Part shown: positions 3,812 to 64,000 of the stretch, piece after piece
Layout: each line of letters opens with the position of its first letter
Position numbering within the stretch: the stretch's first letter is position 1
Assembly (NCBI GenBank): GCA_000388065.2
Contig: KB932203.1
DNA from: Fonticula alba ATCC 38817
Lineage: Eukaryota; Protista; Nucleariida
Reading direction: 5' to 3' (one strand)
Length of the DNA: 64,000 nt
Translations under genes and position numbers: made by a program
The notes under the pieces: generated by a model
The model's database searches: none
The model's input: only the letters and a program-made list of their open reading frames with translations
What the model was told of the DNA's origin: nothing

Positions 3812-4795
3812 CTACCGCCCCCCGCCGGGGGCGCTGCTCCCGGACGCGCTGTTGGACGGGCCCTTCTTCCAGTTCAGCAGCGAAGAGGACATGCTGGAGG
3901 AGGAGGAGCTGGAGAATCCGGAGAAAGTGCTCGAGGGGGCCTGGATCTTGTGAACCTCCTCGAGTACCTGGTTGACGCGGTGCCGGGCCTGGCGCGATAG
4001 TTGCCGGCCCAAGCCGCTGGCCATCAGGCCGGCCAGCTGCTTCGGAGTGTAAACCTGTACAGGTGCATCGCCGCGACATGCGCAAAAAAATAAATAATAA
4101 CACAGGCCAACATTGTAAGCGACAGGCAACAAGCGGCAACAGGAAGGCGCGAAGGAGAGGGACGCAAGGAAAGATGGCACACGCACACGACACTCGCGGA
4201 ACCATCTCTCGGCATCGTCATCCGAGAGATAGAACGCCTTGATGAAGTCCTCGACGTAACGAATGTTGGTCATTCTGGGAGGGAAGGGATGGGGGGGGGG
4301 GGGGAGGTAAATGCAAGTGCCAAGCGAGTGAGTAACCGGGCGAAAGGAAGGGGGGCCACAATCCAAGCAGGATGGAGTCCGAAGCGCGGACAAGCAGGGA
4401 GGGCGTACCGTAGGCCGGTGATCTGCTCCAACGATGTGGCCAAAGTACGGGCATCCAGCTGCATGAGCGCGCGGCCCTGGTTGTTGCAGCGCTTAACACG
4501 TGAATATGCCTCAACCAGGGCCTCGCCGATGACCTGCAGCAAACGGCTGAGGACCAGCTCCACGAGCGGTGACCGGGGAAGTGCCGCCAGCGTGAAGCGC
4601 TTGTCCCCGGCGACTGCCGCCTCGGCCAGTGCCCCGCTCACACCGAACAGGTACCGGAGGGAAGAGGCGTCGGTTGTGAGCCGGCCAATTAGAGCGCTGA
4701 CGTCGTTGGCGACCGCCGACACGTAGGGACTCGAGTCGAAGCCAACCTCGCGCAGCTCCCAGGGGGTGGCCACGATTTGGTTGATGATCGGGGTG

Positions 4796-4842
<47 letters not shown>

Positions 4843-5292
4843 CATCGGGATGCCCCCGAAAGGCAGGGACGATGTGTGGGCAGGGAGAAAGGGCATATTC
4901 ATGCAGGGGGCTGGAGAAGGCACGAATGGCACGAATGGCACGTACCGGCAGGAGGCGCATGGCAAAACAGCGGAACATAAATAGACGCAGCTCCGGCAGG
5001 GCCTCAACCACGCGGTCGAAGAACCCATCCACCAGGGGAGCGCCTCTCCCATCGGAAAGAAGTTTCTGTGGCAGAGAATTAGAGGACAGGGTGGGGGGGG
5101 AGGGAGGCGGACGGTGGACAAGCGGGCATGCGAGCGACAGAAACAAGGGGGACGCACGTCAAGGTGCGACCGAGTGGCAATGAGCACGGTGTACAGGAAC
5201 ATGAGGGATTCCGAGCCGACAATCCGGAAAGGCAAGCCTGGCAAGAACGCGGGCAACATGCGGTGAGATGAAGGGCGAAGAGATGGGGGGGA

Positions 5293-5330
<38 letters not shown>

Positions 5331-8282: not shown

Positions 8283-8322
<40 letters not shown>

Positions 8323-9773
8323 CGAACCACTGGAGCCGGGCCACATTGGCAGCCGGGTTCTTCTGGATGGCCACACGAGTGGCATGCTCACGAGCGATCT
8401 CCGACGAAATGTGCCCCACTTGGTAGGCAAGGTGGCTCTCAAAGTTGCTGGCGATTTGGTCCGACTTGCCGACCAAGTGGTAGCTCACCACCACGCTCTG
8501 GTACACCTCCTCCGAGAAGTCCTGGATCACCTCGACCAGGGCCGCACGTAGGCGCTCCTCGATGACGTCCAGCTGGTCATTCAGGCGGATGGCAAAATGC
8601 TCCACACAGTTGAGCGGATAATGCTCCTCGCTGGATGCCGTCGAAACGGGCAGGCTATGCTGAGAGCTCGGCGTGCCGAGCTGGCTACCGGTCATGGCAG
8701 ACAGGGCCCCGCCCGTGGGCGGGCCTTCATCCAGCCCAGGCGACATCAGGTTGTACTGGGACACCAGGTCCGCCTGGATGGCATGGACCATGCGAATGGC
8801 CACCGGGAAGTTCTTTGTCTCGATGTAGATGTCCACCTGCTTGGCATTGCTGAAGAGCCGCTTGATGGCCGTGATCTCGTCGATCAGGCGCTTGAGATTG
8901 GTGCAGCGCAAATCCTTGGACACGATCTGGAAACTGCCCGTGGTCAGGTGGCTCTTGGCCGTGCGGAGTCGACGCCGGGCCGATTCCAGCAGCAACTCCG
9001 TCTCGTGAAGCTCGGTGCTGAACTTGTGCACCTTGTCCATGCCCTCGACTGGTGTGGGTGGAGGGGAGGGGGGGGGGGGCGAGGGTGAGAGGGAGACAGT
9101 TTAGGAACGAAGAAAAGGGGAGATCAGGAAGAGGGGCCAGGGAGGAATGGCCAGACAGGGCGGAGGTGGGGAACAGGAGGGGGGGGGGGCGGGCGAAAGG
9201 GCGATCGCAGCACGAACCAAAGGACTCGTAGTTGTTCATAATCACATCCGACAAGCGGGAATTCATGATGTCCAACGAACGCTCATAATTGTTGACGATC
9301 TTTTCGATGGCCACATCATCGGCGCGAGTGGGCAGGGACTGGAAGGACCAAAGGAGTGTCATAAGGGGGGGGGGGCACTTTTGTGAGTGACGAAGGCGAG
9401 ACCCAGACCGAGGGGGGAACATTCGAACACGCACCTCCAAGGCCAGGAGGGTGGGATCGAGGCCGGTCTTGAAGAAGTCCTGCGGCAGCTCGGCCAAAAG
9501 CTGCTCGTCGTCGATTTCGCTCTGAGTGGGCTTGAAGCTCTCCTGTATGATGTGAGGCGGAGCGAGGCGAACGCCCGAGGGGGGAGGTCAGACGGAGGCC
9601 AGGTCAGAGGGCAATCCATGCTTGCTCGTGACAAGGGCGGACAGGGCACATACCCGGGTCAAGCGTAGGCTATCCGGGGTATCGGATTGCCACTGCTTGG
9701 ACGTGGCTTCCTGCGCGCTCGACGCGCTGGAAGAGCCGAGGATGCCGCGAACGGCGTCCCCAAGAATGTTCAT
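3812..9773 (-). CDS. VPS50: Syndetin / VPS50 (EARP complex subunit, CCDC132), multi-exon
   Basis: N-terminal Vps54_N-like coiled coil (IVNNYERSLDIMNSRLSDVIMNNYESF; MDKVHKFSTELHETE). VPS50 C-terminal signatures EALVEAYSRVKRCNNQGRALMQLD, YVEDFIKAFYL and YTPKQLAGLM. Probable start MNILGD at 9773 (accATG); TAG at 3812-3814. Confidence 0.9.
4799..4840. repeat. (TG)n microsatellite in a VPS50 intron
   Basis: Perfect dinucleotide run read directly from the sequence. Confidence 0.95.
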
Positions 9774-10921: not shown

Positions 10922-13900
10922 TCAGAAGAAGTCATTGAAACTGAGCGAGAGGCCGATCGAGTCGCGATCGCTGCCGGCTGTTGAGGAAAACGAGGCGTCA
11001 GCCGTCCCGGACCCCGACTTCGAGGCGGCAGCTGATTCACCACCAGGACCGGGGGCCTTCCCCCCGCGGCTCGAAGGCGACGGTGAGGCGGGGTGATGGA
11101 TGACCGAATCGGAGAAGAAGCCGGCCGGCGAGGCGGGGCCCCCCTCCTTCAGGCGGCCGGCCGCGGTGGCCGACACCGGCGGCGACAGGGGCGAGTAGAA
11201 GGAGTCCGATTCCGGGGAGAAGCTGCCATCAGCCCCGGCCAGAGAAAGGCGCGAACGTTTGGGCGACCGGGGCCCGACGCCGGCAGCGACAATGGCCGCG
11301 GCCGAAGCGGCGGCAGGCGAGAAACATGGCAAGGCAGAAGGCGGCCCGGGGGAAGAGGCAGACCCGGCTTCGGAGCCGGGCCCCTCGGTCCCAGGTGGCT
11401 CGTCATGAGGGGCCTTGCGCTTGGGCGAGGAGGTGTTGCTGCTTGGCTCGTGGGGGGGCGCCGGTGCCACGGCCAGGTCGCGCCCACTGTCATTGAGCCC
11501 TGGCGAAGTGACCGGAGGAACGGCCACATTGCCGCCAGGAACAGCGACAGTGGCCGTGGTGGCGAGTGGAGAATCCCCCACCACAGCGGTGGCAGGATCC
11601 TCGGTGACAGTGGCAGCACTGTCGGCAACGGCTGTGAGGGTGGTGGGGGAGGGAAGAGCAGGGCTCGCGGCCGTGACGGCCGCAGTGGCCACCACCCCCG
11701 CCAGCTTGGGCACACTCTCCGGGGCGCGGTCGTCGGGCGGTGGCCGCTGCAGGGCCGAAGCGCGCGACTTCGGGGGGCTAAAAGACATGCTCAGTCCACC
11801 GGTGGGCGGCTTGGCTGACACCAGTGGGCTTTCTGACGGCTGCTTCGGCTCAGGCGGGCAAGGCGGCTGTGACTCCGGCAGGGGGCCAGCCGGGGCGCTG
11901 CTGCTGAGGCTGCTGCGGTCGCTGGCACTGCCGGTGGTGCTGGCGGTGCTGACAGCCGACTCTGTGGAGGAGACCGCGAGCAAAGTGGCAGCTGTCGCGT
12001 CACCCGGCGGCATGCTCGACTTGGCAATCGGGAGGTCGGATTCGGGCACGGCCGGCTCCGGCGAGGAAGACTTGGATGCCATGGGGCCCGGCCGCGGCAG
12101 GCCAATGCTATCACGCGAGGGGCGCTGGTCAAAGACCACATCAAACAGGCAAGGGACATCCTTGGCCGCGCGGGCAATCCGTGTCCCGGCACTTTCGTCG
12201 GCCAGCGATGATGAAGCACCACGCAGCCGGGAGACGGCCGGGGTGAGCGGCGCCAGGGTGGTCAGAATATCAGGGACCGGGGCCGAGGTGGACGATTGGC
12301 CGGGCGCGGCTGGTGGCGGTGGCTGGACCGACACACTTGCAGCTGGCAGCTGGGCAGGAGCTGCCGCCATGGCCGGCACAATGGGCTCAGCGGCCGCGGC
12401 CGGGGCCACAGGCGCCTCGGCCGCGGCTGCCGATGCAGCGGGCTCGGGAGGTGCGGCGAGTTTGCCGGTGACCGAGCCCTGTGACGAGGCAAGCGAGGAG
12501 CCCAGGGAAGTCGCTGACGGGCCGCGGCATGGCACCGGCAAAGACGTGGACAGATCATCCACCGACAGCCCTGGAGAGGGGTCGCGCTGACGGGCACCGG
12601 GCTCGCCGCCGGCCAACGGGCCGGATGCCCCGGCACCGACCAGGGAGAACCTGGCCAGTAGCGGCTCCTCGGGGCCAAGGCTACTGTCAAGTGCGGAGGA
12701 GACCAGCGACGCGGTGGTGCTGGGCGGCGCCGGGGGGATGGGCGGCCGGCTGGCGGAGGCGCCAGGGGCATTGCCGGCCGGAGGGCCGCCAGCCAGTGAG
12801 GCGAAGGAATTCGGATGATCGGGCTTGGTTCCCACCTCGTCGAAGATGCGCGGCCGTGGGGCCATCACGCCAAGGCCACCCGGGCGCCGATCGCTCGCCA
12901 ATGTTGGCTCGGGCACGGCGACGCTCGCGCGATTATGGGGAATAGTCAGCTGCGGCCCGGCCGGGCCGCCATGGCGCCCGGGAATCGGCGGCAGGGAAGC
13001 CGCTTCCGGGTCGACGGCCAGTCGAGCCGGGGCAAGACTGATGCCAAACTGCACGCCGGCTGTGGCCGCGCCACCGGAAGAACCACCGGCAGACCCACCG
13101 GCACCGCGTGAACCCATGGTGGGGGCGGCATTTCGCGGCGCAGTGGAGGCCGCTCCGCCAGCACCGGAGGCCGCATTGCGAGATCCCGAGGTGAAAGAAC
13201 GCGACAGAGGCCGACGAGAGCCATGCTGCGGGGGCACCCCAGTGCCCGGTGTCGGACCGCTGGCCGGCATCGATGAAGACAGTCCCGAGCCCGAGGGAGG
13301 CCGGCCGCCGGTGGCGGCCGGACGACCGGCCGTCGGGCCCGTGCTCGAGGAGAGGGACGCCGACCGTTGACGGTTGACTGTGGCCGGGCCGGTAGTGACT
13401 GTGGTGCTCGATGTGGGGCCCGAGCTGGAGGAGAGGGACGCCAAGCGCTGGCGGCCAGCGGCTGCCGGGGCCCCGGTCGAAGAGGAAGACACACGTCCGC
13501 CTGCGGCAGAGCCTGCGGCGGGAGCTTGGCCGGTGGGTGAGCGCCGAGCGCCGGTGCCGCCAGCCCCACCGGGGGCCAGAACGCTCGGTCGACCACGAGC
13601 ACCAGGGCGCCCGGCCGCCGCGGCGCCCTTGGCTGTTGACGCGCCAGCCTCCGCAGCCAGGACATCAGCATACCGCTTGCCGTCCACCAAAAAAGACTGC
13701 CCACGGTCAGCCTCCCAGCGCTCGATCTCAGCCAGGAGGAAGCGCCGGAGCTCCGGCTTGCGCCGGGCCAGGCGCGTGCGCGTGCGCTCCTCTTCCAGAA
13801 GATTGACGCGCGGTCCACCGCGACGGGTAAGGCGCTGAGGGTCCTGGGTCTTTTCCTATGGGTGTGAAGAGACCCGGGAGGAGGGGACATAGAGAGAGGG

Positions 13901-16266
13901 GAGGATGGAAAGAAGGGAGGCAGGGAAGGGGGGGGGGGGGTGCGTCAGCAACTGGTGACACCTTGCCGGCCATCCAAAGGGCGAGAAGCGACCGGTATGA
14001 CGCACCAAAAACAGGCGCTCCTCCTCCAACAGGGCCATATATTCGTTCTTGGCATTGATCAGACTGGCCATCTGCTGGTGCTGCACGCGGACATTCTCCA
14101 CCATATCCTCATGTGCAGTGAGCACATCCTCGGAGATGGTGTCCGCGAAGGCCGGCGGGAAGAGCGTCCGACGCTCGTCCTCCGGAATGTGCATTTCGTC
14201 CCACAGCGAGGCCAGCTCCTGGCGGGCCAACTCCACGAAGGCCGGCAGTCGCTGCAGGCGAATGGCGCGCAGGCGCTCAAGCTCGCGCTCACACTGACGC
14301 CATATGCCAGAGTACATGGCTGGGGTTAGTGGGGGGGAGGGGCGGAGGGCCGACACCGGTACCAGGCAAGACGAGGGAAGGGCGCGAGGAAAGAAGGGCA
14401 CAGCCGGGCACGAACAATGGCAATCGAAGAGGGAGAGAGGTCGCCGGCCGAGGAGAGGATACCCTCGCGCTCCGGGTCGGCCACGTCCAGGGCGTCCCAC
14501 AGACGACCGATGCCACGCAGGAGGGTGGTCTTCTGCTCGCGCAGACGGTCCCGCTCGAGGGTCAAGCGCTCGTGGGTCTGGTCCAGGTGGGCAATCAACT
14601 TCTCGGAGGGCAGCCCATTGGCCGGGCTGCCGGGCTGCAGCAGCAGCCAGTCGAAGGATCCGGCATCCGGCTGGACACCGAGCTCGGTCCACAGAGCAGC
14701 CACTTGGCCAAGAACCTCTTGGATCCGCTGGCTAGAGGCCGCGCGGCGTCCATTCAGTCGGGCCACCTCAGCCTCGAATTCGGCAACCAGACGCAAGCTG
14801 GAATCCCCGGGGCCACTGGCAGGGGGTGAAGTGGCCGCCAGTACCCGAGCGGTATACGCCTCAATGCTGTCCGCCTGGCTGAGAATGTTGCTGACGGCGG
14901 CCACGGGCATGTCGATTTGCGCGGCCAGGTGAACGGCCTCCTGGAAGAGGGCGGTGATGCGGGCCTGGCGCTCGGCAACGCGCTGTGCAATTCGGGCGGC
15001 GGGAGGAGGCGGGGTGAGATTGGCGGTAGAGGAGACCGAGAGACGGGGAAACGGAGGGAAGGGGAAAGGGGGGGGGGTCCTGCGAACGCACAGCACTGAG
15101 CTTGTTGAGCTTTTCCTGAAGGAAGGACAGGCGCCGCTCGATGTTGCCGATGGCGCCGTCGCTGTAGGATGTGCCAGCCGGGTCCTGAGAAGGCGAGTCC
15201 CCCAGGCGGGCAAGCTGCTCGGCGATGGCACTTTGGCAGTGAGCAATCTCATTGAGCATGGCATCGCGCAGGGAAATCCGATCTTGGAGGAAGGCCTTGC
15301 ACGAATCGGCCAGATGCGAATGCAGGGCCTGGACAATGGAGCAGGCGGGCGGGCGGGGGGGGGGGTCAGCAAGACAGGACACTCAAACACATGGGACCCG
15401 TGGGGACCCGTGGGGAGCCGGGGAGGCCGCACCAGGCAGTCGGTCTGGAGGCCGGAGGCGCTCGAGCCAATTTCACTGTGGATGCAGGCCACCTCCTGCA
15501 AGGTTGCCAGGACATGCTCAGACAATGAGTGCATGATGCTGTCACACTCGGCCTGCATGTCGGGCGACAGAGACAAGGCGGTGGCCGCCTCGCCGGGGCC
15601 GCCATCCGCTGTTAGGGAAAATCGACCAAGCCCGGAGGCTGGCGAGGCCAAGGGCGAGGCCACTGGCGAGGCCAAACCCATGGGAGCCAGTGACCCGGCG
15701 CGACTGGCCGGGAGCGATGCCGGATGCGGGTGCAGAGCCGCACCACCGGATCCCGGGGCATACCCGCCGCCAATCGGGCCAGGAGACATGCTGGCGGTGG
15801 CGGCCGCGGCGGCCGCGGCAGCCGCAGCAGCGGCCGTGCGCCCGAAGGACATGTCTTCCTGGGCACCTGCGAAGTGGCCAGCCTGGATATTGAGTCCCGG
15901 GAGGGGGCCTCGACCGGGGAGATGCTGCCCGGCTGCAGGAGCCGCACCCAGCGAGAAGGCGGTCGGGCGCGAGTTGGCAAATGTGTCCAGGCCAAAGGCA
16001 CCGGTGGGGTTGCTGAATGGCATGCCCTCGCTGGGGCCGCTGGGCAGAACCCCGGCGCCTGGGCCGCTGAAGCCGCTGGTCGGCATGGAGTACCGAAGCA
16101 TGCCGACCGTGGCGGTGGCCGCGGTGGCGATGGTCATCGGGGGGTGGCCGCCGCCCGGGAAGGTGGCTGTGGTGCCCTGCTGCGAGGCGCTCAGTCGGCC
16201 AATGTCAGCAATGCTGCTCATTGCCGAAGATAGCCTGTCACCAGCCAGGTGGGGGCGAGGCTGCAT
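10922..16266 (-). CDS. PRC1: PRC1/Ase1/MAP65 microtubule-bundling protein with very long disordered termini
   Basis: MAP65_ASE1 motifs ELERLRAIRLQRLPAFVELARQELASLWDEM, YMALLEEERLF and DPQRLTRRGGPRVNLLEEERTRTRLARRKPEL...IERWEADRGQSFLVDGKRY. TGA at 10922-10924. Start at 16266 (aacATG) is probable; upstream exons are not excluded. Confidence 0.85.
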
Positions 16267-18424
16267 GTTGATGGGACTCGAGGGGGGTGTGAATGTATGG
16301 GTGGGTGGGTGGGGGGGGGGGGGACTCCCGGGCAGCAGCAAGCCGGCTGAGAGTCGGCGGCCGTGCGGGGCTACGTTGGGCGACGGGCGAGGAGTTCGCT
16401 CGGTAGGCAATGAGAGGGGGAGAGGCGGGGGAGGATACGCGGAAGGATGGATTGGAAACGGGGGCGATGGCACGAGCGGGGGGGGGAGGGGGAGAAGGGA
16501 GGGAGGATACTTCCTGACGGTTTGCCTCCCCGGGTCCGCAGAGGGCCAGGAAAAAAATCCGCCCTCGATCGCGCCCTCCTCCCCGGGAGGGGGGCACCAT
16601 AGCCTTGACCGAGCTGCTTCCGGTCACAGTCGAGGAATGCCCACGGGAGAGGCACCAACGGCCGATCGGACGGTTTTCTCCCCGTCCCCCCCTGCGGCGT
16701 GGTCCGCTTTTCGCCCGTGCCCAGGCAGGCCCGGCCGATCTTGGGCCCTGCGCATGCTTTGGGCGGCCGTTTTGGCCGATTGCGTCCGACGGTGGGACAA
16801 ACCGCCATCGCCCCCCCCCCCCCCCTCGACTACCCCTTTTGCGGCCGACCACACGGAAAGAGCCGCAGGGACAAGGCACAAAGAGGGGGCACTCTCCCAC
16901 GCCCCCCCAGGCGAATCGGCTCTGATCAGATCGTCTGCAGGGCCTCCGGATCCATGGGCGGGCAGGGGACGACGCCTCGACGAGGGGCGCGCCCTGGCGG
17001 CGTATCTCCCGGCGCACCTCCGCTCTGTCCGGCTTCCCCAGCAGCGCACGACTAGAGCCCCCGGCCGTCGCCCAGTTCGGCCCCCCCCCCGCCGCGGGCT
17101 GGAGAGCGTTGGACGGAGGAATTCAAAAGTAACGACTTGAATAATGGCATTCTTCTTCTGCTGAAGGAGTGGCAGTAGACGAGTGCCGATCCAACTGTCG
17201 CGCTCGATCCGCCTGCTGCCGCCGGACTGCGCCCTCTAGCCGGCAAGAAGCCGCGCGAGACGGGCTCCGGGCACATCCTGCCGCTGCCTGACGCTGTGCG
17301 AAAGGGGGACCCGGCGCCCGGAACCCGGGGGGGGGGGGACTTCTCCGCACGCGGAGGGTGCGCTGTGCACGCGCGCATCTGGTCGGCATGCCGAGGCAGT
17401 CCTGTCCCACGCCCGGGGAGGGGCAGGTCGCAATATCACTGCCACTGTGCTGTCGCTCCTTCGCTTGGGGCACCCCCCTCCCCGGGCCGTCTCTAGCGCG
17501 TGGCGCACATCCGCCGGCGGGTGCGAGCCCCCACAAAGGCCCGCAAGGAGTTCCCCCTGCCCCGTGTCGGAGCCAGCGCATCGCTGGAGAAGTCTCCCAC
17601 CCCGGAGAAGGGGAGGGCCCGCTGCATGCTTTGCCGACTGGGCGCCGGGATGGTGCCCTCTCCCCCCCTCCCCCCCCGGAGGCCGCCAACCGTCTGTTCC
17701 CGCAGGAGGCGCGGAGAAGGGTCCCCCTCCCCGGCCTCCTCCCGCGGCTTCCCCCCCCCCCTCCCGCCCCAGCGCATCGGAAAGAACACACCACACCAGA
17801 GAGAAAGGGCACGGCGGGAACAACGAACAAGAAAGGGGGAGGATGTTGTGTGGTAGGCACATTATAGTTGAAAGGGGGCGAGAAGAGAGAGTACTAATGA
17901 ATGGAGTGGGCGGCTACACGTGACGAAGGGCACACACTGAGAGAGGGAGGGGAGAGGAGGAGAGAGGGATGGGGGAGAGGGGGAACACAACGAGAAGGAG
18001 AGAAACACGCGGGCACGCGCGCGCACAGCGGGAGACACACACACACAGACACCGGAGGGGGGGGGAGAGAGAGAATGTGTGTATGTGTGGCGATGGTGGC
18101 GCACACAGGGGAGAAGCCCCATCACCGCGCGGCCTGGGAAAGGGCCGCATCGCGCATGCACGCGCGCGCCTTTGGGGGCGGCACACCTAATACACGCTGT
18201 GTCGACGACACCCCCAAACATCACAGCGACGCCCTGGACACCCCCCCGCAGGCGCACTCGCCATCACGGGGAAGCCACAGAGCCGGACACCCGGAGAGGG
18301 GAGGAGAGGATCCCTGGCGCGCATGTGCGCACGCCAGGGGGGGAGCTCCCCCCCGCCACCTCACCGGCCAACCGGCACGCACAAAGCAACCCTCGCGCGC
18401 GCCGCCGCCGCTGACATCGCCCAT

Positions 18425-46099: not shown

Positions 46100-46504
46100 N
46101 NNNNNNNNNNNNNNNNNNNNNNNNNNNNNNNNNNNNNNNNNNNNNNNNNNNNNNNNNNNNNNNNNNNNNNNNNNNNNNNNNNNNNNNNNNNNNNNNNNNN
46201 NNNNNNNNNNNNNNNNNNNNNNNNNNNNNNNNNNNNNNNNNNNNNNNNNNNNNNNNNNNNNNNNNNNNNNNNNNNNNNNNNNNNNNNNNNNNNNNNNNNN
46301 NNNNNNNNNNNNNNNNNNNNNNNNNNNNNNNNNNNNNNNNNNNNNNNNNNNNNNNNNNNNNNNNNNNNNNNNNNNNNNNNNNNNNNNNNNNNNNNNNNNN
46401 NNNNNNNNNNNNNNNNNNNNNNNNNNNNNNNNNNNNNNNNNNNNNNNNNNNNNNNNNNNNNNNNNNNNNNNNNNNNNNNNNNNNNNNNNNNNNNNNNNNN
46501 NNNN
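46100..46504. other. Assembly gap inside the tRNA cluster
   Basis: N run immediately preceded by CCAACC, which is the first six bases of the tRNA. Confidence 1.
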
Positions 46505-46978: not shown

Positions 46979-47269
46979 TCCTTCCTTTTGATCGTTTGGC
47001 CTGACGCATCTTTTGCACGAGGAGTCATCAAGGGGGCTGGGGGGAGGGGGTGTGAGGGAGAGGACCAGGGGGAGAGAGAGAGAGAGAGAGAGGGAGAGAG
47101 ACGCGTGCTCCTGGGGTGTGGTGTCGGGATAGAGCGTCTGTCCGACATGATATGTCTCTTTGATCTCCCCCGGGGTGTCCGCCCACCCATTTCTCTCTCC
47201 TTGCTAAAAAAAAGTTCCCCCCATCCCCTCCTACCTAGAGGCGCACCTGTTGTCGGCAAAAGGGTAGTG

Positions 47270-47357
47270 TCCAACCAGCCGGAATCGAACCAGCGACCCT
47301 CAGATAATTGCTTGTAACCGCTACAGTCTGATGCTCTACCAATTGAGCTATGGTTGG
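47270..47357 (-). tRNA. tRNA-Tyr-GTA: tRNA-Tyr(GTA), copy 4, intron CGGTTACAAGCAATT
   Basis: Reverse-complement copy with identical exons; followed on the minus strand by CACTACCCTTTT. Confidence 0.97.
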
Positions 47358-47798: not shown

Positions 47799-47886
47799 CC
47801 AACCATAGCTCAATTGGTAGAGCATCAGACTGTAGCGGTTACAAGCAATTATCTGAGGGTCGCTGGTTCGATTCCGGCTGGTTGGA
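47799..47886 (+). tRNA. tRNA-Tyr-GTA: tRNA-Tyr(GTA), copy 5, intron CGGTTACAAGCAATT
   Basis: Identical exons; followed by CACTACCCTTTT. Confidence 0.97.
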
Positions 47887-48808
47887 CACTACCCTTTTGC
47901 GGCTCAGGGCGCCTGCAGTCGGTTTTCTGCCGCTCATCGTTGCCAGACGGTGAGGAGGAGGGGGGGACTGCGCGACAAACAGCCGGGGTTCCTCCGAGAA
48001 CCCGGAGGGAGGAGGAGGAGGACAGGAAGCCACGAGGAGAGAGAGGGGCGACTTGGACCGCGGGGAAGGAGAGGGGGGGGGGGGGGGAAAGGCCGGTGGC
48101 GGCACACCAGAGGGACCGATGGCTGAGTCTCGAACACCCGGGGGCGGGGGGGGCCGGGTGATGTGCCTGCATTGCGCATCCGTGGATGTGCATTTTCCCG
48201 TGTCCCTTCCTTCTCCCCTCGGGGGCCCCTCGTGGCGGGTGGGTGGGCTCCCCAGACCGCGGAGATCCTAACCGCACGAGGGAGGGACAGTCTGCAGTCG
48301 TAGACTGTATACTGTGCTCTCGCTGAGTTTTCTAGAAAAGGGACGTGATACAGGAATAACATTCCACAGGTACTCGGAGGCACCCCCCTTTGCCCCCCCC
48401 CCCCGGAAACCACTTTCCCTCCGCTCGGTCTTTTCTTCCCAGCCCTTCCTCAGTCTCGCCCAGGGAAAGCGCCGGCGAGAAGGGACGGGGCACTTGGGCC
48501 TGGGCGAGATTTGCATGCCGGGCCTCCCCCCCCCCCCTCTCTCTCTGTCCCGGGGAACTGGCCCCTCGTCCCTGTTCCGCAGGCGCGGCCACCAGGGAGG
48601 GGGGGGCGGGGACAGGGTGGGCAGGGGACCCCAGACCCGGACACACGCGCTCACACGCGCACACCTGCTCCCCATTGTGGGTTTATGCTCTGCGCACGCG
48701 GCCGCGCGCGCGCGCGCGCGCGCGCATGCCCCGAACAACCTCCCCGGGGCGGACTCCGGCCGGCGGCCGCGGCCCTCTCAGAGCGCCTTCTTTCTACACA
48801 AGCACACC

Positions 48809-55586: not shown

Positions 55587-55667
<81 letters not shown>

Positions 55668-55770: not shown

Positions 55771-58700
55771 ATGGGTCATGGCGACAGCCCACACGTCCCC
55801 AAGTCGCCTCCTGGCGAGGCGGGGGAGTCGACAGCGCCTGACCGGCGGAGCCCCTCGCCGGTGGCCGTCCTCTCCAACTTCCTGGGGGATCTGGTCAACT
55901 TGACGGTCCTTGACCTGAGTGGTGCGTGTGCTTGTTCTGCATCGCATGGGCACACGCACGCGCGCACGCGCGCACGCAGGCCCATCCCATCCCGCCCATC
56001 CTCTTTCCTCCCTCGCCCTGTTCCTTTCTTCCTCTTTCCTCCCGCCTCCCTTTCTTTTCTCCCTCTCCTTTTGGCCCTCCCTTCTTCGGCCCTTCTTCTC
56101 CCTCTATCTATCTATCTGTCTGTCTGTCTGTCTCTCTCTCCCCCGCTCACTCATGACCACCGCATCCTCCGGCCATCTGCTTGTCTCGCCATCTTGTTGC
56201 AGGCGATTCTCTCGATGATTCGGCTTTCCTCCTGTTGATGGCCTCCCTTGCCGCACTCGATGGCCCGCCCCTGAAGGAGCTCTACCTCGCCGGTACGAGC
56301 ACGTGCTGCCCCCTTCCCTCCTCGTTCCCCTCCCCCCTCCCNNNNNNNNNNCCCGCCCCCACTCACCCGTGCTGCTTCCTCCTCGCCCTGTATCGCTGCC
56401 CAGATCTTGGCCTCAGTCCTCAGGGCTTTTCCAACGGCCTTCAACTTGTGTCTCGACAGTTGACCTGCCCGCCGAAATTGAGCGGCGTCCATTCCCTTTC
56501 ACTTTCTTGTGCGCATGCACCTGCCACTCTCTTCGCCTTGACGTTGGACCCCCTTGCCTCCGGCTCGCGTACTCACTCGGCCGAGATGCCACCTCCACAC
56601 CAGACAACTCCGTCGCCAGCATCCCCGCCTCACGGGCCCTTTGTTCCTTCATCGCCATGCTCCCGGAGCTGCAGCTTCTATTCCTCGAACGTGCGTCCAC
56701 ACTCTCCCTTCGCCGTCTCCTTCCGCTCTCCCCCCCGCTCCTCCTCCCCCTCCTCCTCGGACCGATGTGGCTCCCCTACCCACTGACGCCCTGTCGTCCT
56801 CGCTTGGCACTTTTAGATATGGACCTCTTCCCGTGGGCCACGGAGTTCCTGCCTCTGGTGTTGCCCCACCTGCCTCAATTGCAGGAGCTCCGTCTCGATG
56901 GTATGCACCATGCTTCCGTTCACACACGCACACGCGCCCCCCCCCCCCTCCTCCCCCCTTTTCGTCCCCCTGAATATGTTGTCCCTTCTTGATCTTGCTG
57001 ACCAGTCGATGAAATCCCCCCTCCCCCCCCCCCCGAACAAACACATCGTCATCTCCGCTCAGGCAACACCTGCACAGACATCGAGGTTGCCAGCATAGCC
57101 TACCAGCTCCATGGCAAGCCTCTCAGCCTCCTCTCTCTCCGAGGTAGTTCCCCTCCCATTTTGCCCCTTCCCTCCCCCCCTCCCCTTTCGCGTCTCCCCC
57201 TCTCTTTTCTCCTCTCTCCAGCCTCTCTAGTGCCGAGCCGACAGGGCACTTTCTTCTCTTTCCTCACTCTCCCCCCTCCTGCGCAGGCAATCCAATCTCC
57301 CTGAACCCCGATCTTGCTCCCTCCACTCCCCTGCTTGTCCAGTACCTGGACCTTTCAGGTACGTACTGTGGCAGACTACCAGGCTATGTCCCTCCCCCCT
57401 TCCCTCCCCGCCATTTCCGCTCGCTTCCATTGACCATGCTCCACGGTTTCTGCTTCCTCGCCCGCCCTCGGCATTCAGAGTCAGGTCCTCTCTCCATTGG
57501 CCACCTATCGAGCTACTTCTTCCCAGGCACCTTGGTCCACCTGAGGCTCGTCTGTGCGTCGCCATCCGATGGTCCTGGCCCCCCGCTTGTCTTTCCCACC
57601 CTGCGCAGGATCTCACCGTTTTTTTTCTTCCCTTGGATCAGCTTCGAGCCTTGTCGAGATGCCGCCTGGACTTCGGTCGCCTGGCTTCCCTGCGCTTCGG
57701 ATCCTGGAACTGTCCCATGGTGCGCTCTCTTTTCGCGTTCCCCCTCTGCTGTCTTGCGTGCGCACATATAGGCGCAGACGCAGATACACACACGCACACG
57801 CACACGCACACGCACACACACACGCACACGCACACGCACACGCACACGCACACGCACACACACACATACTCACCTCTGGAACTATCTCCAGTGCCTTTGC
57901 CCTCGATTACCACATCCCTCACGCATCTGCTCGGTCCAAATCTCCTTGTTCTGGATTTGTCATGTTCGTGGCCGATCACTCGCTTATGCCCGCTTTTTCA
58001 TGCCCGCTCCCTTGTGTTAGTATCCTGACACACACACACACACTTATCCAACAATCAGTCTGCAACCTGATCCCCGATGACCTGGCCCGATTGGCTCTCG
58101 AAAGTCGTCAACTCGGCAATCTGGCCTACCTGGACCTCTCCTGTGCGATCACCCTTTCGGTCAGCTTTCTTCCCACAGCGTGCCAGCGCCGCCTGATGCT
58201 GCCCCGTATCTGACCCTTCCCCCCTTGTTCTCAAACTACGTAACATGGCCGATGCAGCCAATCCCCTGGTCACCCTCGATGCGCTGACGACCTTCTTCCA
58301 GCTGTCCTTCACTCACCTGCGCCACTTGCTGGTGTTGTTTGTTGATGGTATGGCCCCGATGCCCATCTCCTCTTCTCTCCCTCTTCCCGCCCCTCCACCG
58401 CCATCACTCACCCGAATAACCGGTTGTCCCCCCCCCCTCCTCCCCTCTTCCTCCCCAACCAGCGCTGTCCATCCCTGCGCCGGCTGTTGTACAGGCACTC
58501 CTCTCTTCAGTCCTTCCGCCCCTGCTCTGGATTTCCTTCCAATCCGAGAGCCCCCTTTGTGCATTCCCCTCAACCGATGCGGCCGAGCCCCACATCACCT
58601 CTCTCCTTCAAACTCTCATGCTCCCGGCACACTTTGGTCGGAACCTGGCCGGCCTACTGGGCTCCGCTCTGGAAAGTCCGCTGGCCGGCCTCGCCCCATG

Positions 58701-60928
58701 GGCCACCCGCCTCGGGGCCTTCCTGGCCGATTTGCCCAGGCAGGCATCCGCCCTGGTGGGCTTCTCAATGGCAAACGAGCCCGGCAGGCTGCCCCACATC
58801 CGGCACCTGGAGATCTCCCATCCAGGCCAATTGCGTCCGATGGATCCCGGGGGGGCACCCATCATCCCCCCCAAGGCCCTTCCGGGCGCCGGGCAGCCGA
58901 CTGTCACTTCGACAACTGCCACTTCCGACAACGGCGTCAGTGGCATCACCGATGAGGTCTGCACGGGCAGCTGCAGCCGTTCCGACGAAGCACCCCCTGT
59001 CGACCTGTATGTGCCTCGATTATTTTGTTCTTCGCTCTTCCTTTTCTGCCCCCCTTCCCCCCCCCCTGTCTTTCAATTGCTCGGGTTGCCCCTGCCCCGA
59101 TCGCGCATCTCTTTCGGTTTCTTTCCCTCCCGGCGACTTACACCCCGCACACATGCGCAGGACACACAATCGCACCTCCAGCCCCCTGGCGCCGGCGCCA
59201 AGTCCAGCGCGATTCCAGCCCTGCCACCGCATGGCACAGTCGCCCTTCTCTCATCCCGGGCCGGGAGGGGGATCCCTGCGCAGCCGCAGCGTCTCGCCCT
59301 CCCCCTCGTTGTCCTTTTCTTCGTCGTCCTCCTCCTCCTCCTCCCCCAGGTCGACCCCCCCGCCGGTGGGGTCCTCCCCGGAGCCGGCGTCCGTGGAGGA
59401 GGAGGGCGATGAAGTGGGCTTCCCCTCGCCGGTGTGCATGTGGCCGGCCCTTTCGGAGACGCCCCTTCCGGCACAGGTGCCGGCCCTCTGCGCGTTGGAT
59501 GCCCAAGTCCCGGCAGCCGGCTGTGCCAAGGCCCCGGCCGCCAGGTGTGGCAGGACCCCGACTGCCGGTGATGACAGGCCTCCTTCCCCGACGACGGCGG
59601 CCATGGCCACCAGCCGATCGCCCTCGATGTTTTGCCTCCCCCCCTCGTTGGAGGAGGGGCCACCGGCGGTGCCGCCCCCCCTGCCGGGCTGTCCTCCAGC
59701 GGCGATGGGCCTGGCCCCGCGGTCGGGCCACCGAAAGCTGGGCCTCTGCATTGGCATCAATGAGTACCAGCACTTCCCGCCACTTGGCTCGGCGGCCAAT
59801 GACGCCTACCGCATTGGTCGGCGCTTTGAGGAGCTCGGCTGGTCCATCCGATATGTGATTGGCCTGGCCGGGTCATCGGGGCCCGGGGCCGGGGCCGGGG
59901 CCGGGGCCGCCAGCACCGGGGGGGCCGATGGTCCTCTGCCTCCTCGGCCGAATGCCGACTCGGGCTCTGCCACCCCGGCGGATGGTGGCTGGTCCGACAC
60001 CACCGAGCCGATCTTCGACTATTTGCCCCCGGCGGCCGAGCTGCCGGTCGATGAGTTTGGCCGGATTCGCGGCGGCCCGGTCTCCACGCGACGCCTGCGC
60101 GCGGCGCTGTCCTGCCTGAGCCGGACCATTGCCACTTCGCCCGAGCCGTGCATTGTCTTTGTCTTCATCGCGGCGCATGGCTGCATGAACAGCAATGTCA
60201 CCTATGTCCTGGGCTCGGAATGCCAATTCGACCGAGCATACCGTCTGGACCCGGCTGGCCTGATGCCGGTGGGGTTTGTGATGGGCTGCTTCCGTCACGA
60301 TGCCAGCCAGTTGACCTTTGGCTTGTCGATTCTGGACATCTGCCAGACCCCGGCCCCGGTGAGCTGGCCACCGACCGAAAGGGGGCTCAGTGGTGGGCTG
60401 CTGCAGGGGCCCGGGGCCGGCCGGGCGCGCCTCATGCGAGCCTCATGGCCACCGACGGCGCCCTCGTCCGCGGGCCGGGGGGAGGCAGCCCGGCGGCACT
60501 TTGTCCGTGAGGAGGGGAGTGTGCGCTTGGCGGCCGGGGGCCGGCCCGCCTCGCCGCCCCTGCCGGCCCAATCGTCGCCGGGTCCCTTGTCTGCCGGTAC
60601 TCGAGCCGAGGGGCTTCGCCTGTCGCAGAGCCTGGCGGCCTACTTCCAGCGCCGTTGGCCGGAGGCCGTGGCCCTGCCCCCGCAGAATATGGTTCTCTTT
60701 TACAGCTGCCTGCCGAAGGCCTTCTCGTACGAGCTATCCAAGCAAGAGCACAGCATCTTCACGGTGGTCCTGCTTGAATACCTGTTCCAGCGTCGACGGT
60801 GCATCTTCTTCGTTTTGCAGCAGGTTGCCCAGCGCGTATCATATCACTCCCGGCGTTTGTGTCACCGCCGCGCGCAAAAGCCATGCATCGTACACGCATG
60901 CTCCAACTCCTTCGAGCTGTTCCCCTAG
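55771..60928 (+). CDS. Leucine-rich-repeat protein fused to a C-terminal caspase-family (C14, paracaspase/MALT1-like) protease; about 1126 aa, 14 exons, 5' end uncertain
   Basis: Hand-spliced exons 55771-55921, 56203-56292, 56404-56508, 56604-56690, 56817-56900, 57063-57143, 57287-57358, 57479-57553, 57642-57719, 57892-57963, 58059-58142, 58258-58347, 58463-59006, 59161-60928 total 3381 nt. All introns are GT-AG and there is no internal stop. Splicing creates LRR motifs across junctions (SLSLSYNSV, ELRLDGNTC, LLSLRGNPI, LDLSFCNL, LDLSSNPL). The last exon carries LCIGINEY...NDA, FIAAHG, ILDICQ. Confidence 0.8.
59735..60925 (+). other. Peptidase C14 (caspase-hemoglobinase fold) domain
   Basis: KLGLCIGINEYQHFPPLGSAANDAYRIGRRFEELGW; catalytic His in AAHG (CAT 60176-60178); catalytic Cys in LDICQ (TGC 60341-60343); small-subunit strand NMVLFYSCLPKAFSYE...HSIFTVVLLEYL. 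Confidence 0.88.
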
Positions 60929-62336: not shown

Positions 62337-63973
62337 CAGTCCATCATGCGCGGATCCCCGCCTTGCGGAGGGCGAAGAAGCCGGCTGGGGCAGGCGCGGC
62401 CGAGCGACCGGGCGACCGAGCAGCAAGAGCATCGTGGCGCACCCTCAGCCTCGTCAATGAAAATGAGAGTCCCATTGCGCGAGGTCTTGGCCCAGTTGAA
62501 GAGGTTGTGGAGCTCCGTCACACCGGACGTCCCGAGAGGGACAATATCACCGCCCGTGATGAGGGCATACTCGAGGCCACTCTTCTGGGCCAGGCTCTTG
62601 GCGAACATGGTCTTACCGGTACCCGGGGGGCCATAGAGCAGGAGGTTACGCAGGGGGGCATTGTTGCGCTTGGCATTCATGGTCGACACGACGATGGACT
62701 CGAGGCGGGCCTGCTCCGACTGGTTGAGGACCATGTCACGCAGAACGGCCGAGGACTCCGGGCGCTTGGAAATCAACTTCCGCGCGAAGACCAGCGGCTT
62801 CTTCAGGGCATTGGTGCGAGAGGTCTCGCGCACCAGCACCGGCGCATTGATGCGCAGCATGACATACTCGCGCAGGACCTTGGCACCGAAGTAGGAGGCA
62901 AAGCCACCGGCAAACAGGAGCGACGTGGTGACAACCGCCGCGCGGATGCGGTTCGGGTCCGACAGGAAGTCGCTCAGCTCATCGGAAATGAGGGCAATCC
63001 GCTCGCGCGTCAGCAGCAGCGCCGTCTTGCGTTCCTCCTCGTGGCGCAGTCGCGCATGGGCGGCGCGGATGTCATGGTTCACGCGCTCCTGCTCGATGCG
63101 CCCCTGGGTCTCGTGCTGGATTTTGGACATCTCGGTCTCGCGGCGCATTTGCTGCTCCATCTGGGCCGTTTCGCGGCGGGCCTGCTCCTGGCGCTCGATC
63201 GAAGCCTCCTGCATTTGGAGGGTCTCCTGCTGGAGCTGCTTGCGGGCGGCGATCTCGCGCTCCTGGCGCTCGTGCGCCGCGCGGTCCTTCGTCTGCTGCC
63301 GGTGGTTGATGTGGGAGGTTTCCATCTCGATGGTCTTGCGCCGCTCCTCGTGCTCGATCTGAATGCGACGAGCCTCCAGGTCCCGCAGGCTTGCCATGGC
63401 ATCGGCGCGCTCGGCCTCAAACTGAGCCCGGCGACTGCGCTCGCGCTCCAGCGACAGGGTGATGGCATCGCGCCCGTGGGGGCTATTGTCGAGTTCCCTG
63501 TGTGTGTGAGGGGGGAGAAGGGGGGGGGGGAGGGAGGGAGGGGCAGCATGGCCGGAGGGACAAGAGTTGGGGCAGCGAGGAGGGGAATGGGGGGCGGGCA
63601 GATCAAGGTCAAGGGAGGTTAGGCAAGATGTTCTACAGCCACCGAGGGCGCATGTGGTCATTGTGGATGGGCATGCATGCATATGTGTGTGTGTGTGTAT
63701 GTATGCATGTCGATGGGTGTGCGAAACAGCCATACACCCGAGAGCGAGACGGGGGGAGGGGGTGTGTGTGGGGGGGGGGGGGAGAACGCACTTGGCAGCC
63801 TCGGCGGCACGCACGAAGGCCTGCGAATCGAACAGCTGGGTGGGGCTAATGTTGGTATTGGTGCTGGAGTTGGTCGCGGTCTCGGCCGGAGCGGCAGCCG
63901 GGGCGGCAGCCGGAGCGCTGCTGGCGTTGTTGCCGGAGGGCTTGGAGCCGCCGCCACCGAAAGCAGAAAACAT
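61740..63973 (-). CDS. ATAD3: ATPase family AAA domain-containing protein 3 (mitochondrial)
   Basis: FDSQAFVRAAEAAK/ELDNSPHGRDAITL N-terminal motif, coiled coil, TM segment, PVLVRETSR, Walker A YGPPGTGKTMFAK, ITGGDIVPLG, Walker B IFIDEAE/AFLKKR, LASNQP, HDRMDEMV, EGFSGRSLSKL. TAA at 61740-61742. Confidence 0.95.
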
Positions 63974-64000
63974 GGTTGCTGAGAGGGGGGAAAGGGATCA

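What the first reader, a model, noticed from the sequence alone, without database searches (positions are those of the whole stretch)
56203..58347. Eleven consecutive symmetric phase-1/1 exons, roughly one LRR per exon
Exon lengths are 90, 105, 87, 84, 81, 72, 75, 78, 72, 84 and 90 nt, all multiples of 3. Every flanking intron is phase 1 and falls at the same repeat position, just after LxxLxL and before the conserved Asn. Any exon or block of exons can be skipped or duplicated without frameshift. Established: vertebrate NOD1/NOD2 have similar phase-1, about 84-nt single-LRR exons. Inference: the array grew by exon duplication and could support combinatorial splicing or rapid shuffling of a ligand-binding surface. 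The repeats are highly diverged, so the array is old or fast-evolving.
Basis: partly seen in the sequence, partly recalled or inferred. Interest (0 to 1): 0.78.

Follow-up and report, generated by a model that had tools for sequence, protein, structure and literature searches.

The report
LRR gene with one repeat per exon
In the amoeba Fonticula alba, the leucine-rich-repeat part of one gene is cut into twelve small exons, each coding one turn of the coil and all split at the same spot; this is real, but it is a known way for repeat proteins to grow, and at least ten other loci in this genome look the same.

Summary
The eleven exons exist at the stated coordinates with the stated lengths, and every border is GT-AG. 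Spliced together with the upstream start exon, they reproduce residues 1-356 of NCBI protein H696_02311 (Fonticula alba) exactly. The pattern is slightly larger than reported. Twelve consecutive introns are phase 1. Eleven split the same codon, position 8 of LxxLxLx[x]N, and one lies a codon later. An AlphaFold model shows twelve beta strands, one per exon. The N gap lies inside intron 2 and touches no coding base, but a hidden symmetric exon there cannot be excluded.

Growth by tandem exon duplication is well supported. The repeats are old: there is no nucleotide or intron similarity.

The NOD comparison holds for design but not for position. Human NOD exons break inside the beta strand, three residues earlier.

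Combinatorial splicing is untested, and the short introns argue against it.

My own genome scan found the same single-LRR, phase-1 exon design at eleven other loci. Five first-reader notes of this scan also report such arrays on other DNA of this genome. This gene is therefore one member of a genome-wide class, here joined to a caspase-like domain. I rate it a new member of a known kind, of moderate interest.

The parts
55771..55921 (+). Exon 1: start codon, 29 N-terminal residues and the first LRR. It ends in phase 1 after the first h-x-x-h-x-h-x motif.
   Evidence: identical to the start of P0001. Beta strand at residues 46-48 in the model.
56203..56292 (+). Exon 2, 90 nt, symmetric phase 1-1, LRR 2.
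56293..56403 (+). Intron 2 (phase 1). It contains the assembly gap N 56342-56351, so its length is only an estimate.
   Evidence: The gap lies 49 nt after the donor and 52 nt before the acceptor.
56404..56508 (+). Exon 3, 105 nt, phase 1-1, LRR 3 (the longest unit, 35 residues).
56604..56690 (+). Exon 4, 87 nt, phase 1-1, LRR 4.
56817..56900 (+). Exon 5, 84 nt, phase 1-1, LRR 5.
57063..57143 (+). Exon 6, 81 nt, phase 1-1, LRR 6.
57287..57358 (+). Exon 7, 72 nt, phase 1-1, LRR 7.
57479..57553 (+). Exon 8, 75 nt, phase 1-1, LRR 8.
57642..57719 (+). Exon 9, 78 nt, phase 1-1, LRR 9. Its 3' intron lies one codon later in the repeat than all the others.
   Evidence: In the model the split codon is 4 rather than 3 residues after the strand.
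57892..57963 (+). Exon 10, 72 nt, phase 1-1, LRR 10.
58059..58142 (+). Exon 11, 84 nt, phase 1-1, LRR 11. Together with exon 10 it carries the only Pfam LRR_4 hit of the protein.
58258..58347 (+). Exon 12, 90 nt, phase 1-1, LRR 12 (the last repeat).
58463..59006 (+). Exon 13, 544 nt. It enters in phase 1 and leaves in phase 2. It encodes a helical cap followed by a low-complexity linker with no family match.
59350..60928 (+). Exon 14, ending in stop TAG at 60926-60928. It encodes the rest of the linker and a divergent Peptidase_C14 (caspase-fold) domain with long insertions, at residues 667-1053.
   Evidence: Pfam PF00656: E 4e-12, 46.7 bits against a cut-off of 21.4. 29 of 30 ESM-Atlas neighbours carry PF00656.

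Best explanation
This is the LRR domain of a single-copy Fonticula alba gene, H696_02311. The gene has 14 exons and encodes 1063 residues: 12 LRRs, a linker, and a caspase-fold C14 domain.

The LRR domain was built by tandem duplication of an ancestral cassette of one LRR per exon flanked by phase-1 introns. Only a symmetric exon can be copied in tandem and keep the frame. The uniform phase and repeat position are therefore a historical signature of how the array grew, not evidence of a present-day function.

The duplications are old, because the units have diverged to 19-37 % identity and the introns are unrelated. The same cassette design occurs at no fewer than eleven other loci in the genome, so it is a trait of a whole class of ribonuclease-inhibitor-type LRR genes in this lineage. 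In this gene it is joined to a protease-like domain.

The gene is most likely spliced constitutively into one mRNA. The product is a curved twelve-turn LRR solenoid, a binding or regulatory surface, tethered by a flexible linker to the C14 domain.

Shown: the exon structure, the phases, one strand per exon, the ribonuclease-inhibitor-like fold, the absence of recent duplication, and the presence of the design at other loci. Inferred: duplication as the origin, constitutive splicing, and a sensor-plus-protease role.
For: - Exons, phases and splice signals.
- The spliced product is identical to an independently annotated protein.
- The AlphaFold model built from a 21-row alignment has pLDDT 87-96 over residues 30-370 and 12 regularly spaced beta strands, one per exon. 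Each split codon lies 3 residues after a strand end (4 for intron 9).
- Foldseek's best matches are ribonuclease inhibitors and NLRP LRR domains, E 6e-8 and weaker.
- The units are true repeats: mean pair score 3.07 against -8.33 +/- 1.07 after residue shuffling.
- The units are not recently copied: exon nucleotide similarity is 8.3 against 7.8 for shuffles, and the best intron pair scores 24, equal to the highest score seen in shuffles.
- The same module occurs elsewhere in the genome. Best-chain scores are 13-43 at eleven loci (L036, L038, L039, L041, L042, L044, L045, L047, L050, L051, plus the non-LRR L046), against at most 7 in 13 control tiles and at most 8 on the opposite strands of these loci.
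- A strict donor pattern occurs 70 times in the genome against 34 for the reversed control, and the hits cluster at these loci.
Against: - No transcript data were available. The splice sites rest on sequence logic and on the public gene model, which may itself be a prediction.
- No orthologue or paralogue exists to date the duplications or to show variation in exon number.
- The units give no tree, so duplication is inferred from shared intron position alone.
- The gap in intron 2 could hide an exon.
- My scanner looks only for phase-1 exons with the motif at this position. It cannot say how many LRR arrays in the genome use other designs.
Confidence: 0.8

Rival explanations
1. The symmetric exons are used as cassettes. 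Regulated or stochastic exon skipping, or somatic or germline reshuffling, produces many LRR variants from one gene and so diversifies a ligand-binding surface.
For: - All 11 internal exons are symmetric, so every skip is in frame.
- The residue made at a new junction falls at the variable position 8.
- There is precedent in human NLRP3 (PMC6642158) and in brown-algal ROCO genes (PMC11378527).
- The design recurs at many loci of this genome.
Against: - No isoform data exist.
- Introns 2-12 are 88-172 nt, with uniformly good GT and YAG signals. That regime favours intron retention over exon skipping (general knowledge).
- Unit lengths vary from 24 to 35 residues, so the units are not interchangeable blocks like the 171-nt NLRP or 72-nt ROCO exons.
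- There are no near-identical exons that would mark recent shuffling.
- The gene is single-copy with no relatives.
Confidence: 0.1
2. The repeats first arose in an intron-free gene. The introns were inserted later and independently at the same site of each repeat, because that site resembles a preferred insertion site or because a spreading intron element targeted it.
For: - In 7 of the 12 junctions the last exon base is G, which loosely resembles a proto-splice site.
- Other LRR genes of the genome that Pfam models detect are not split this way.
Against: - The bases around the junctions share no common sequence.
- The introns are not related to one another: the best pair scores 24, equal to the highest shuffled score. 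There is therefore no spreading element.
- Twelve independent hits on the same codon position and phase in units of 24-35 codons are wildly improbable.
- The same position is used at many other loci.
Confidence: 0.06
3. The exon-intron model is an artefact of gene prediction, and the locus is not expressed as modelled or is a decaying gene.
For: - No RNA evidence was reachable.
- The protein has no orthologue anywhere: 23 weak hits among 1.84 billion representatives.
- The C/T-rich introns contain few stop codons, and 9 of the 13 introns could be read through without meeting a stop.
Against: - Only splicing at exactly these sites restores a 12-fold LRR periodicity.
- That spliced product folds with high confidence into a regular solenoid.
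- All 13 introns carry canonical signals.
- Third-position GC of 0.76 against 0.54 at the second position is a coding signature.
- There are no frameshifts or stops in 3192 nt of spliced CDS.
Confidence: 0.04

Closest known systems
Vertebrate NOD/NLRC-type LRR domains (NOD1, NOD2): one 28-residue ribonuclease-inhibitor-type LRR per 84-nt exon
   Same: - One LRR per short frame-preserving exon.
- The exon border falls at a fixed place in every repeat.
- The LRRs are of the ribonuclease-inhibitor type. Foldseek's best hits are RI and NLRP, and the best sequence hits are LRR_6 arrays.
- Literature: PMC2747839 and PMC6642158.
   Different: - The human exon unit is X-L-a-a-N...L-a-a-L, so its border lies inside the beta strand. 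Here the border is three residues later, after L-x-x-L-x-L-x.
- Unit length here varies from 24 to 35 residues instead of a strict 28.
- There is no NACHT domain in this protein, and none lies next to any of the other arrays.
- The partner domain is a C14 peptidase.
- The phase of the NOD introns was not verified here.
NLRP and ribonuclease inhibitor (RNH1) genes: 171-nt exons encoding two alternating LRRs (28 + 29 residues)
   Same: - Exon modularity, frame preservation and the same LRR class.
- There is a weak two-unit periodicity here as well: same-parity units are more alike (p about 0.01).
   Different: - One repeat per exon here, not two.
- The units here are far more diverged.
- Alternative splicing is shown for human NLRP3 (PMC6642158) and is untested here.
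Brown-algal LRR-ROCO genes (Ectocarpus, Saccharina): 72-nt LRR exons with exon shuffling and alternative splicing (Zambounis 2012; PMC11378527)
   Same: - A protist lineage with many genes in which each LRR is a separate symmetric exon.
- These genes have been proposed as a source of receptor diversity.
   Different: - Phase 2 and a fixed 72 nt there; phase 1 and 72-105 nt here.
- Recent shuffling and multiple isoforms are documented there. Here there is no similarity between exons beyond the motif and there are no isoform data.
- The partner is ROC-COR there and a C14 peptidase here.
Gonadotropin receptor LRR exons (LH and FSH receptors), the classic case of LRR growth by exon duplication
   Same: Similar-sized in-phase exons, one LRR each, interpreted as duplication of a prototype exon (as cited in PMC11378527).
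   Different: Phase 2 there. Those are extracellular typical-type LRRs, and the lineage is animal.
Caspase-fold C14 peptidases (metacaspases, paracaspases, orthocaspases) fused to sensor repeats
   Same: The C-terminal domain passes the Pfam PF00656 cut-off and has C14 neighbours in the ESM Atlas.
   Different: - It is very divergent. Only one C14 match appeared among 1.84 billion representatives (E 5e-4), and no PDB sequence match at E <= 10.
- It carries long insertions: 387 residues against a 233-position model.
- Its subtype and catalytic residues were not tested here.
- No other protein combining LRRs with a C14 domain was found.

Membership tests
Exon-per-repeat LRR arrays built by tandem exon duplication (general class) | Each exon encodes a whole number of LRRs (here one). 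| tested here: met
   There are 12 h-x-x-h-x-h-x motifs, one at the end of each of exons 1-12. The model shows 12 beta strands, one per exon.
Exon-per-repeat LRR arrays built by tandem exon duplication (general class) | Exons are symmetric: the same intron phase on both sides and a length divisible by 3. | tested here: met
   The 11 internal exons measure 72-105 nt, all are multiples of 3, and introns 1-12 are all phase 1.
Exon-per-repeat LRR arrays built by tandem exon duplication (general class) | Introns lie at the same position of every repeat. | tested here: met
   11 of 12 introns split position 8 of the motif, and 1 lies a codon later. In the model the split codon is 3 residues after the strand end in 11 cases and 4 in 1.
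Exon-per-repeat LRR arrays built by tandem exon duplication (general class) | The repeat units are demonstrably homologous to one another. | tested here: met
   The mean pairwise score is 3.07 against -8.33 +/- 1.07 for residue-shuffled units. At nucleotide level the signal is near noise.
Vertebrate NOD/NLR LRR exon module (shared ancestry of the module) | The exon border lies inside the beta strand (unit X-L-a-a-N ... L-a-a-L). | tested here: not met
   The border here comes after L-x-x-L-x-L-x, three residues downstream, compared with PMC2747839.
Vertebrate NOD/NLR LRR exon module (shared ancestry of the module) | Ribonuclease-inhibitor-type LRR with a strict 28- or 29-residue period. | tested here: inconclusive
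   The fold is closest to RI and NLRP and the sequence is closest to LRR_6 arrays. However, units range from 24 to 35 residues and Pfam itself reports only LRR_4.
Vertebrate NOD/NLR LRR exon module (shared ancestry of the module) | A NACHT or NB-ARC nucleotide-binding domain lies upstream of the LRRs. | tested here: not met
   P0001 has no such domain. The only NACHT hit above cut-off in the genome is at C3:2137019, away from every array.
Brown-algal ROCO-type shuffling LRR exons | Uniform 72-nt phase-2 exons with evidence of recent shuffling. | tested here: not met
   The exons here are phase 1, 72-105 nt, and show no exon-exon nucleotide similarity beyond shuffles, compared with PMC11378527.
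Alternatively spliced LRR cassettes | Transcript isoforms that skip or repeat LRR exons. | not testable with these tools
   No RNA data were reachable. The protein's cluster holds one sequence from one contig.
Peptidase C14 (caspase fold) | A match to the family profile above the curated cut-off. | tested here: met
   PF00656 scores 46.7 bits against a cut-off of 21.4, at residues 667-1053. The ESM Atlas agrees.
Peptidase C14 (caspase fold) | A catalytic His-Cys dyad in place, and assignment to a subtype (meta-, para- or orthocaspase). | not tested
   This domain is modelled at low confidence (pLDDT below 50) and has no PDB sequence match. It is the subject of other findings of the scan.

The most novel reading that the evidence does not exclude
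Fonticula alba, in the sister lineage of fungi, independently evolved a genome-wide set of single-LRR phase-1 exon cassettes. There are at least eleven LRR loci counting this one, and their intron position differs from that of animal NLRs. On this reading the cell uses the cassettes, by exon skipping or recombination, to vary intracellular binding surfaces. In H696_02311 such a variable sensor is wired directly to a caspase-like protease. That would amount to an NLR-free, splice-diversified innate-immune or self/non-self system in an aggregative amoeba.
Probability: 0.07. Interest if true: 0.8.

Novelty: new member of a known kind. Interest (0 to 1): 0.35.

Why it matters
Symmetric one-repeat exons are the textbook trace of domain growth by exon duplication. 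They are also the precondition for splice-based variation of LRR receptors, as shown for human NLRP3 and proposed for brown algae.

Finding the design in a holomycotan amoeba, at many loci and with an intron position different from animals and brown algae, adds an independent instance and points to convergence rather than inheritance. It also supplies a simple, specific sequence signature for finding LRR genes that profile searches miss. This gene and its look-alikes escaped the Pfam LRR scans of the genome because each exon is too short to score.

The practical gain is modest. The result gives a clean gene model, a caveat about the gap, and a defined RNA-seq test of the splicing idea.

Tried and rejected
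1. Paralogue search with P0001 in its own genome found only self hits.
2. Profiles built from the exon peptides, each given by reference (A1 and A2), were searched against the genome. The tool's first-look filter passed only 8 and 15 candidates, mostly the training exons, so this does not work as a census.
3. A search of the genome with Pfam PF00656 missed even this gene, so the count of caspase genes is unknown.
4. The AlphaFold run without an alignment was useless, with mean pLDDT 37, and was replaced.
5. A PDB sequence search with the C14 part gave nothing.
6. Long open frames next to four other arrays gave no credible Pfam domain.
I therefore could not fetch gene structures of the NACHT-LRR and kinase-LRR hits from other eukaryotes to compare intron positions directly.
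8. Literature searches for the intron phase of NOD exons found no explicit statement.
The analysis was redone from coordinates in /data.
10. No self-joined spliced sequence was handed to any search tool. Exons went in one by one by reference, and whole-protein searches used the database record P0001 that a tool had returned.
11. Chance was rejected as an explanation, and so was a spreading intron element.
Full report
OBSERVATION

I read 55800-58800 and rebuilt the exons by script. Every intron begins with GT, mostly GTGCG or GTACG. Every intron ends in YAG after a pyrimidine-rich tract.

A word search with the downstream open frame returned one database protein, P0001. It is NCBI hypothetical protein H696_02311 of Fonticula alba, 1063 residues, on a contig of 3,619,281 bases. 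That is the length of contig C3, which holds this window.

The eleven exons joined to a start exon at 55771-55921 translate to a peptide identical to residues 1-356 of P0001. The remainder of P0001 maps to two more exons, 58463-59006 and 59350-60928. The gene therefore has 14 exons and 13 introns.

Introns 1-12 are all phase 1 and intron 13 is phase 2. In 11 of the 12 phase-1 introns the split codon follows h-x-x-h-x-h-x directly. Intron 9 lies one codon later. The residue after the split codon is Asn in only 4 of the 11 exons and Cys in 1, so the 'conserved Asn' is only partly conserved.

THE GAP

N 56342-56351 lies within intron 2 (56293-56403), 49 nt after the donor and 52 nt before the acceptor. 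No coding base touches it. The frame across it is set by the two splice sites, and both are phase 1. The 101 known bases already make an intron of ordinary size for this gene, whose introns 3-12 measure 88-172 nt.

One point cannot be settled. Because all exons here are symmetric, an extra exon inside a larger-than-estimated gap would leave the frame intact. The exon count is therefore a lower bound.

NOT CHANCE

I wrote a scanner for AG|exon|GT units with three requirements: length divisible by 3, no stop codon in the phase-1 frame, and an ending of the hydrophobic motif plus one base. It finds 13 units in the 6 kb around the array. Elsewhere it finds 7 on the + strand and 14 on the whole - strand.

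A chain version scores 50 for this tile and 2-7 for the 13 other tiles of the window.

If about one intron in three is phase 1, twelve in a row has a probability of about 2e-6. This is a general figure; I had no phase table for this genome. Coincidence of position within the repeat is rarer still.

WHAT THE EXONS ENCODE

- Pfam finds LRR_4 at residues 290-336 and Peptidase_C14 at 667-1053 (46.7 bits, cut-off 21.4).
- Without an alignment AlphaFold failed, with pLDDT 37.
- With a 21-row alignment of the hits from the large search, residues 30-370 reach pLDDT 87-96. The model shows twelve evenly spaced beta strands, one per exon.
- The split codons are residues 51, 81, 116, 145, 173, 200, 224, 249, 275, 299, 327 and 357. 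Each lies 3 residues after the end of a strand, except 275, which lies 4 after. This matches the sequence analysis.
- Foldseek places the domain nearest to ribonuclease inhibitors and NLRP LRR domains (E 6e-8 and weaker).
- The best sequence relatives are LRR_6-type arrays attached to unrelated domains, including kinase, NACHT and MIB_HERC2.
- The C14 domain is divergent. It is modelled poorly and has no PDB sequence match, but 29 of its 30 ESM-Atlas neighbours carry PF00656.
- I did not test its catalytic residues or subtype. Other findings of the scan address that.

AGE AND ORIGIN OF THE ARRAY

The units are true repeats: the mean pair score is 3.07 against -8.33 +/- 1.07 after residue shuffling.

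At nucleotide level the exons are barely more alike than shuffles (8.3 against 7.8). The introns are not related to each other: the best pair scores 24, which equals the highest score seen among shuffles. There is thus no sign of recent duplication and no sign of a spreading intron element.

Same-parity units are somewhat more alike than opposite-parity ones (p about 0.01, a single post-hoc test). This hints at duplication of two-exon blocks, as in ribonuclease inhibitor.

The gene has no paralogue in its genome. In a full HMMER pass over 1.84 billion representatives it has only 23 hits at E <= 0.001, one of them the protein itself. The 22 others are weak, and none combines LRRs with C14. Exon number across species or paralogues therefore cannot be compared.

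THE SAME DESIGN ELSEWHERE IN THE GENOME

Five first-reader notes of this scan describe one-LRR-per-exon, phase-1 arrays on other pieces of this genome. I treated them as a lead and looked for such arrays myself.

A degenerate donor pattern gave same-strand clusters on contig C1. A stricter pattern gave 70 genome hits against 34 for the reversed control, again in clusters.

I fetched 17 regions. Eleven have best chains scoring 13-43, against at most 7 in the 13 control tiles and at most 8 on the opposite strands of these loci. The clearest are:
- L036 (C1:983000-992000, 10 strong exons)
- L047 (C31:13500-22500, 10 strong exons)
- L038 (6 strong exons)
- L044 (5 strong exons)
- L041 (5 strong exons)

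Most of their exons are 81-87 nt and begin, after the split codon, with Asn or Cys. That is the canonical ribonuclease-inhibitor-type unit.

The units of this gene align colinearly with those of the other arrays. They are no closer to each other than to the others (p = 0.2).

L038 and L039 share a downstream region (E 5e-7 and 6e-4) that has no Pfam domain. No NACHT domain lies near any array.

In contrast, the LRR genes that Pfam profiles detect in the genome carry several LRRs per open frame. One of them, an SDS22-like gene, has two LRRs per exon. They score at background in the scanner.

H696_02311 is therefore one member of a genome-wide class and not a singular structure.

COMPARISON WITH WHAT IS KNOWN

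Exon modularity of LRR domains is established in several systems:
- Human NODs encode one 28-residue LRR per exon and NALPs two (PMC2747839).
- Short LRR exons of human genes are overwhelmingly frame-preserving. In most NLRs the border lies at the same place in the beta sheet. NLRP3 exon 5 is alternatively spliced with functional effect (PMC6642158).
- Brown-algal ROCO genes have 72-nt phase-2 LRR exons with shuffling and isoforms, and gonadotropin receptors have phase-2 LRR exons (PMC11378527).

The Fonticula module differs from each. The border lies after the strand rather than inside it, the phase is 1 rather than 2, and the lengths vary. The resemblance to NOD1/NOD2 is thus one of design.

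I found no paper in the held library on LRR gene structure or on caspase homologues of Fonticula.

HOW IT MOST LIKELY WORKS

The symmetric structure is best read as a historical mark of tandem exon duplication. An exon can be copied in tandem and stay in frame only if the phases on its two sides match.

I expect constitutive splicing into one mRNA. The product would be a twelve-turn LRR solenoid linked by about 300 poorly ordered residues to a caspase-fold domain. A binding or autoinhibitory module joined to a protease is a plausible role, but that is inference.

The splice-diversification idea remains possible because every skip is in frame. Nothing here supports it, however. Introns 2-12 are short and have uniformly good signals, a regime that in other eukaryotes gives intron retention rather than exon skipping. 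The units are also of unequal length.

LIMITS

- No RNA evidence was available.
- The public gene model is not independent proof of splicing.
- The scanner sees only this one design.
- The genome census is a lower bound built from a sample of pattern hits.
- No self-joined spliced sequence was sent to a search tool. Exons were given singly by reference, and whole-protein work used P0001 as returned.

Noticed in passing
L046 = G000:C17:11000-20000, minus strand (reverse-complement coordinates 4562-7604): This is a run of about ten symmetric phase-1 exons, mostly 129 nt, each encoding one 42-43-residue repeat that ends in a-L-x-x-L-A-x-N. It shows the exon-per-repeat design for a second repeat type, possibly Armadillo-like. 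Only 1 of 10 units hits PF00514, at E 0.015.
   Followed up: partly
L036 (C1:983000-992000 +), L047 (C31:13500-22500 -), L038, L039, L041, L042, L044, L045, L050, L051: These are other loci of the same genome with chains of single-LRR phase-1 exons of about 84 nt. Their partner domains are unknown, and the adjacent long open frames gave no credible Pfam hit.
   Followed up: partly
L038:3-2720 (-) and L039:1105-3270 (-): The long open frames downstream of two of these arrays share two colinear similar blocks (BLASTP E 5e-7 and 6e-4). They appear to form a small family of LRR array plus an unnamed C-terminal region.
   Followed up: partly
window 47269-47357 (-) and 47799-47887 (+): Two 89-nt tRNA-Thr(TGT) genes lie in inverted orientation about 440 nt apart. 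They sit in the only AT-richer stretch of the window (GC 0.46 at 46-48 kb), next to the N gap at 46100-46504.
   Followed up: no
window 57770-57870 and 55590-55660: A CA/CACGCA microsatellite fills most of intron 9 of the LRR gene. A TG microsatellite lies just upstream of the start codon at 55771.
   Followed up: no
window 56203-58347: LRR units of the same parity (1, 3, 5... or 2, 4, 6...) are more alike than neighbouring units (p about 0.01). This hints at an older two-exon duplication unit.
   Followed up: partly
window 55835-55921: The last 87 nt of exon 1 are preceded by AG and would by themselves form a symmetric phase-1 LRR exon. An alternative, longer 5' structure of the gene cannot be excluded without RNA data.
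   Followed up: no
window 4273-9100 (-), 10925-16623 (-), 62339-63997 (-): The neighbouring genes are ordinary housekeeping genes: Vps54/syndetin-like, MAP65/ASE1-like, and an ATAD3-like AAA ATPase.
   Followed up: no
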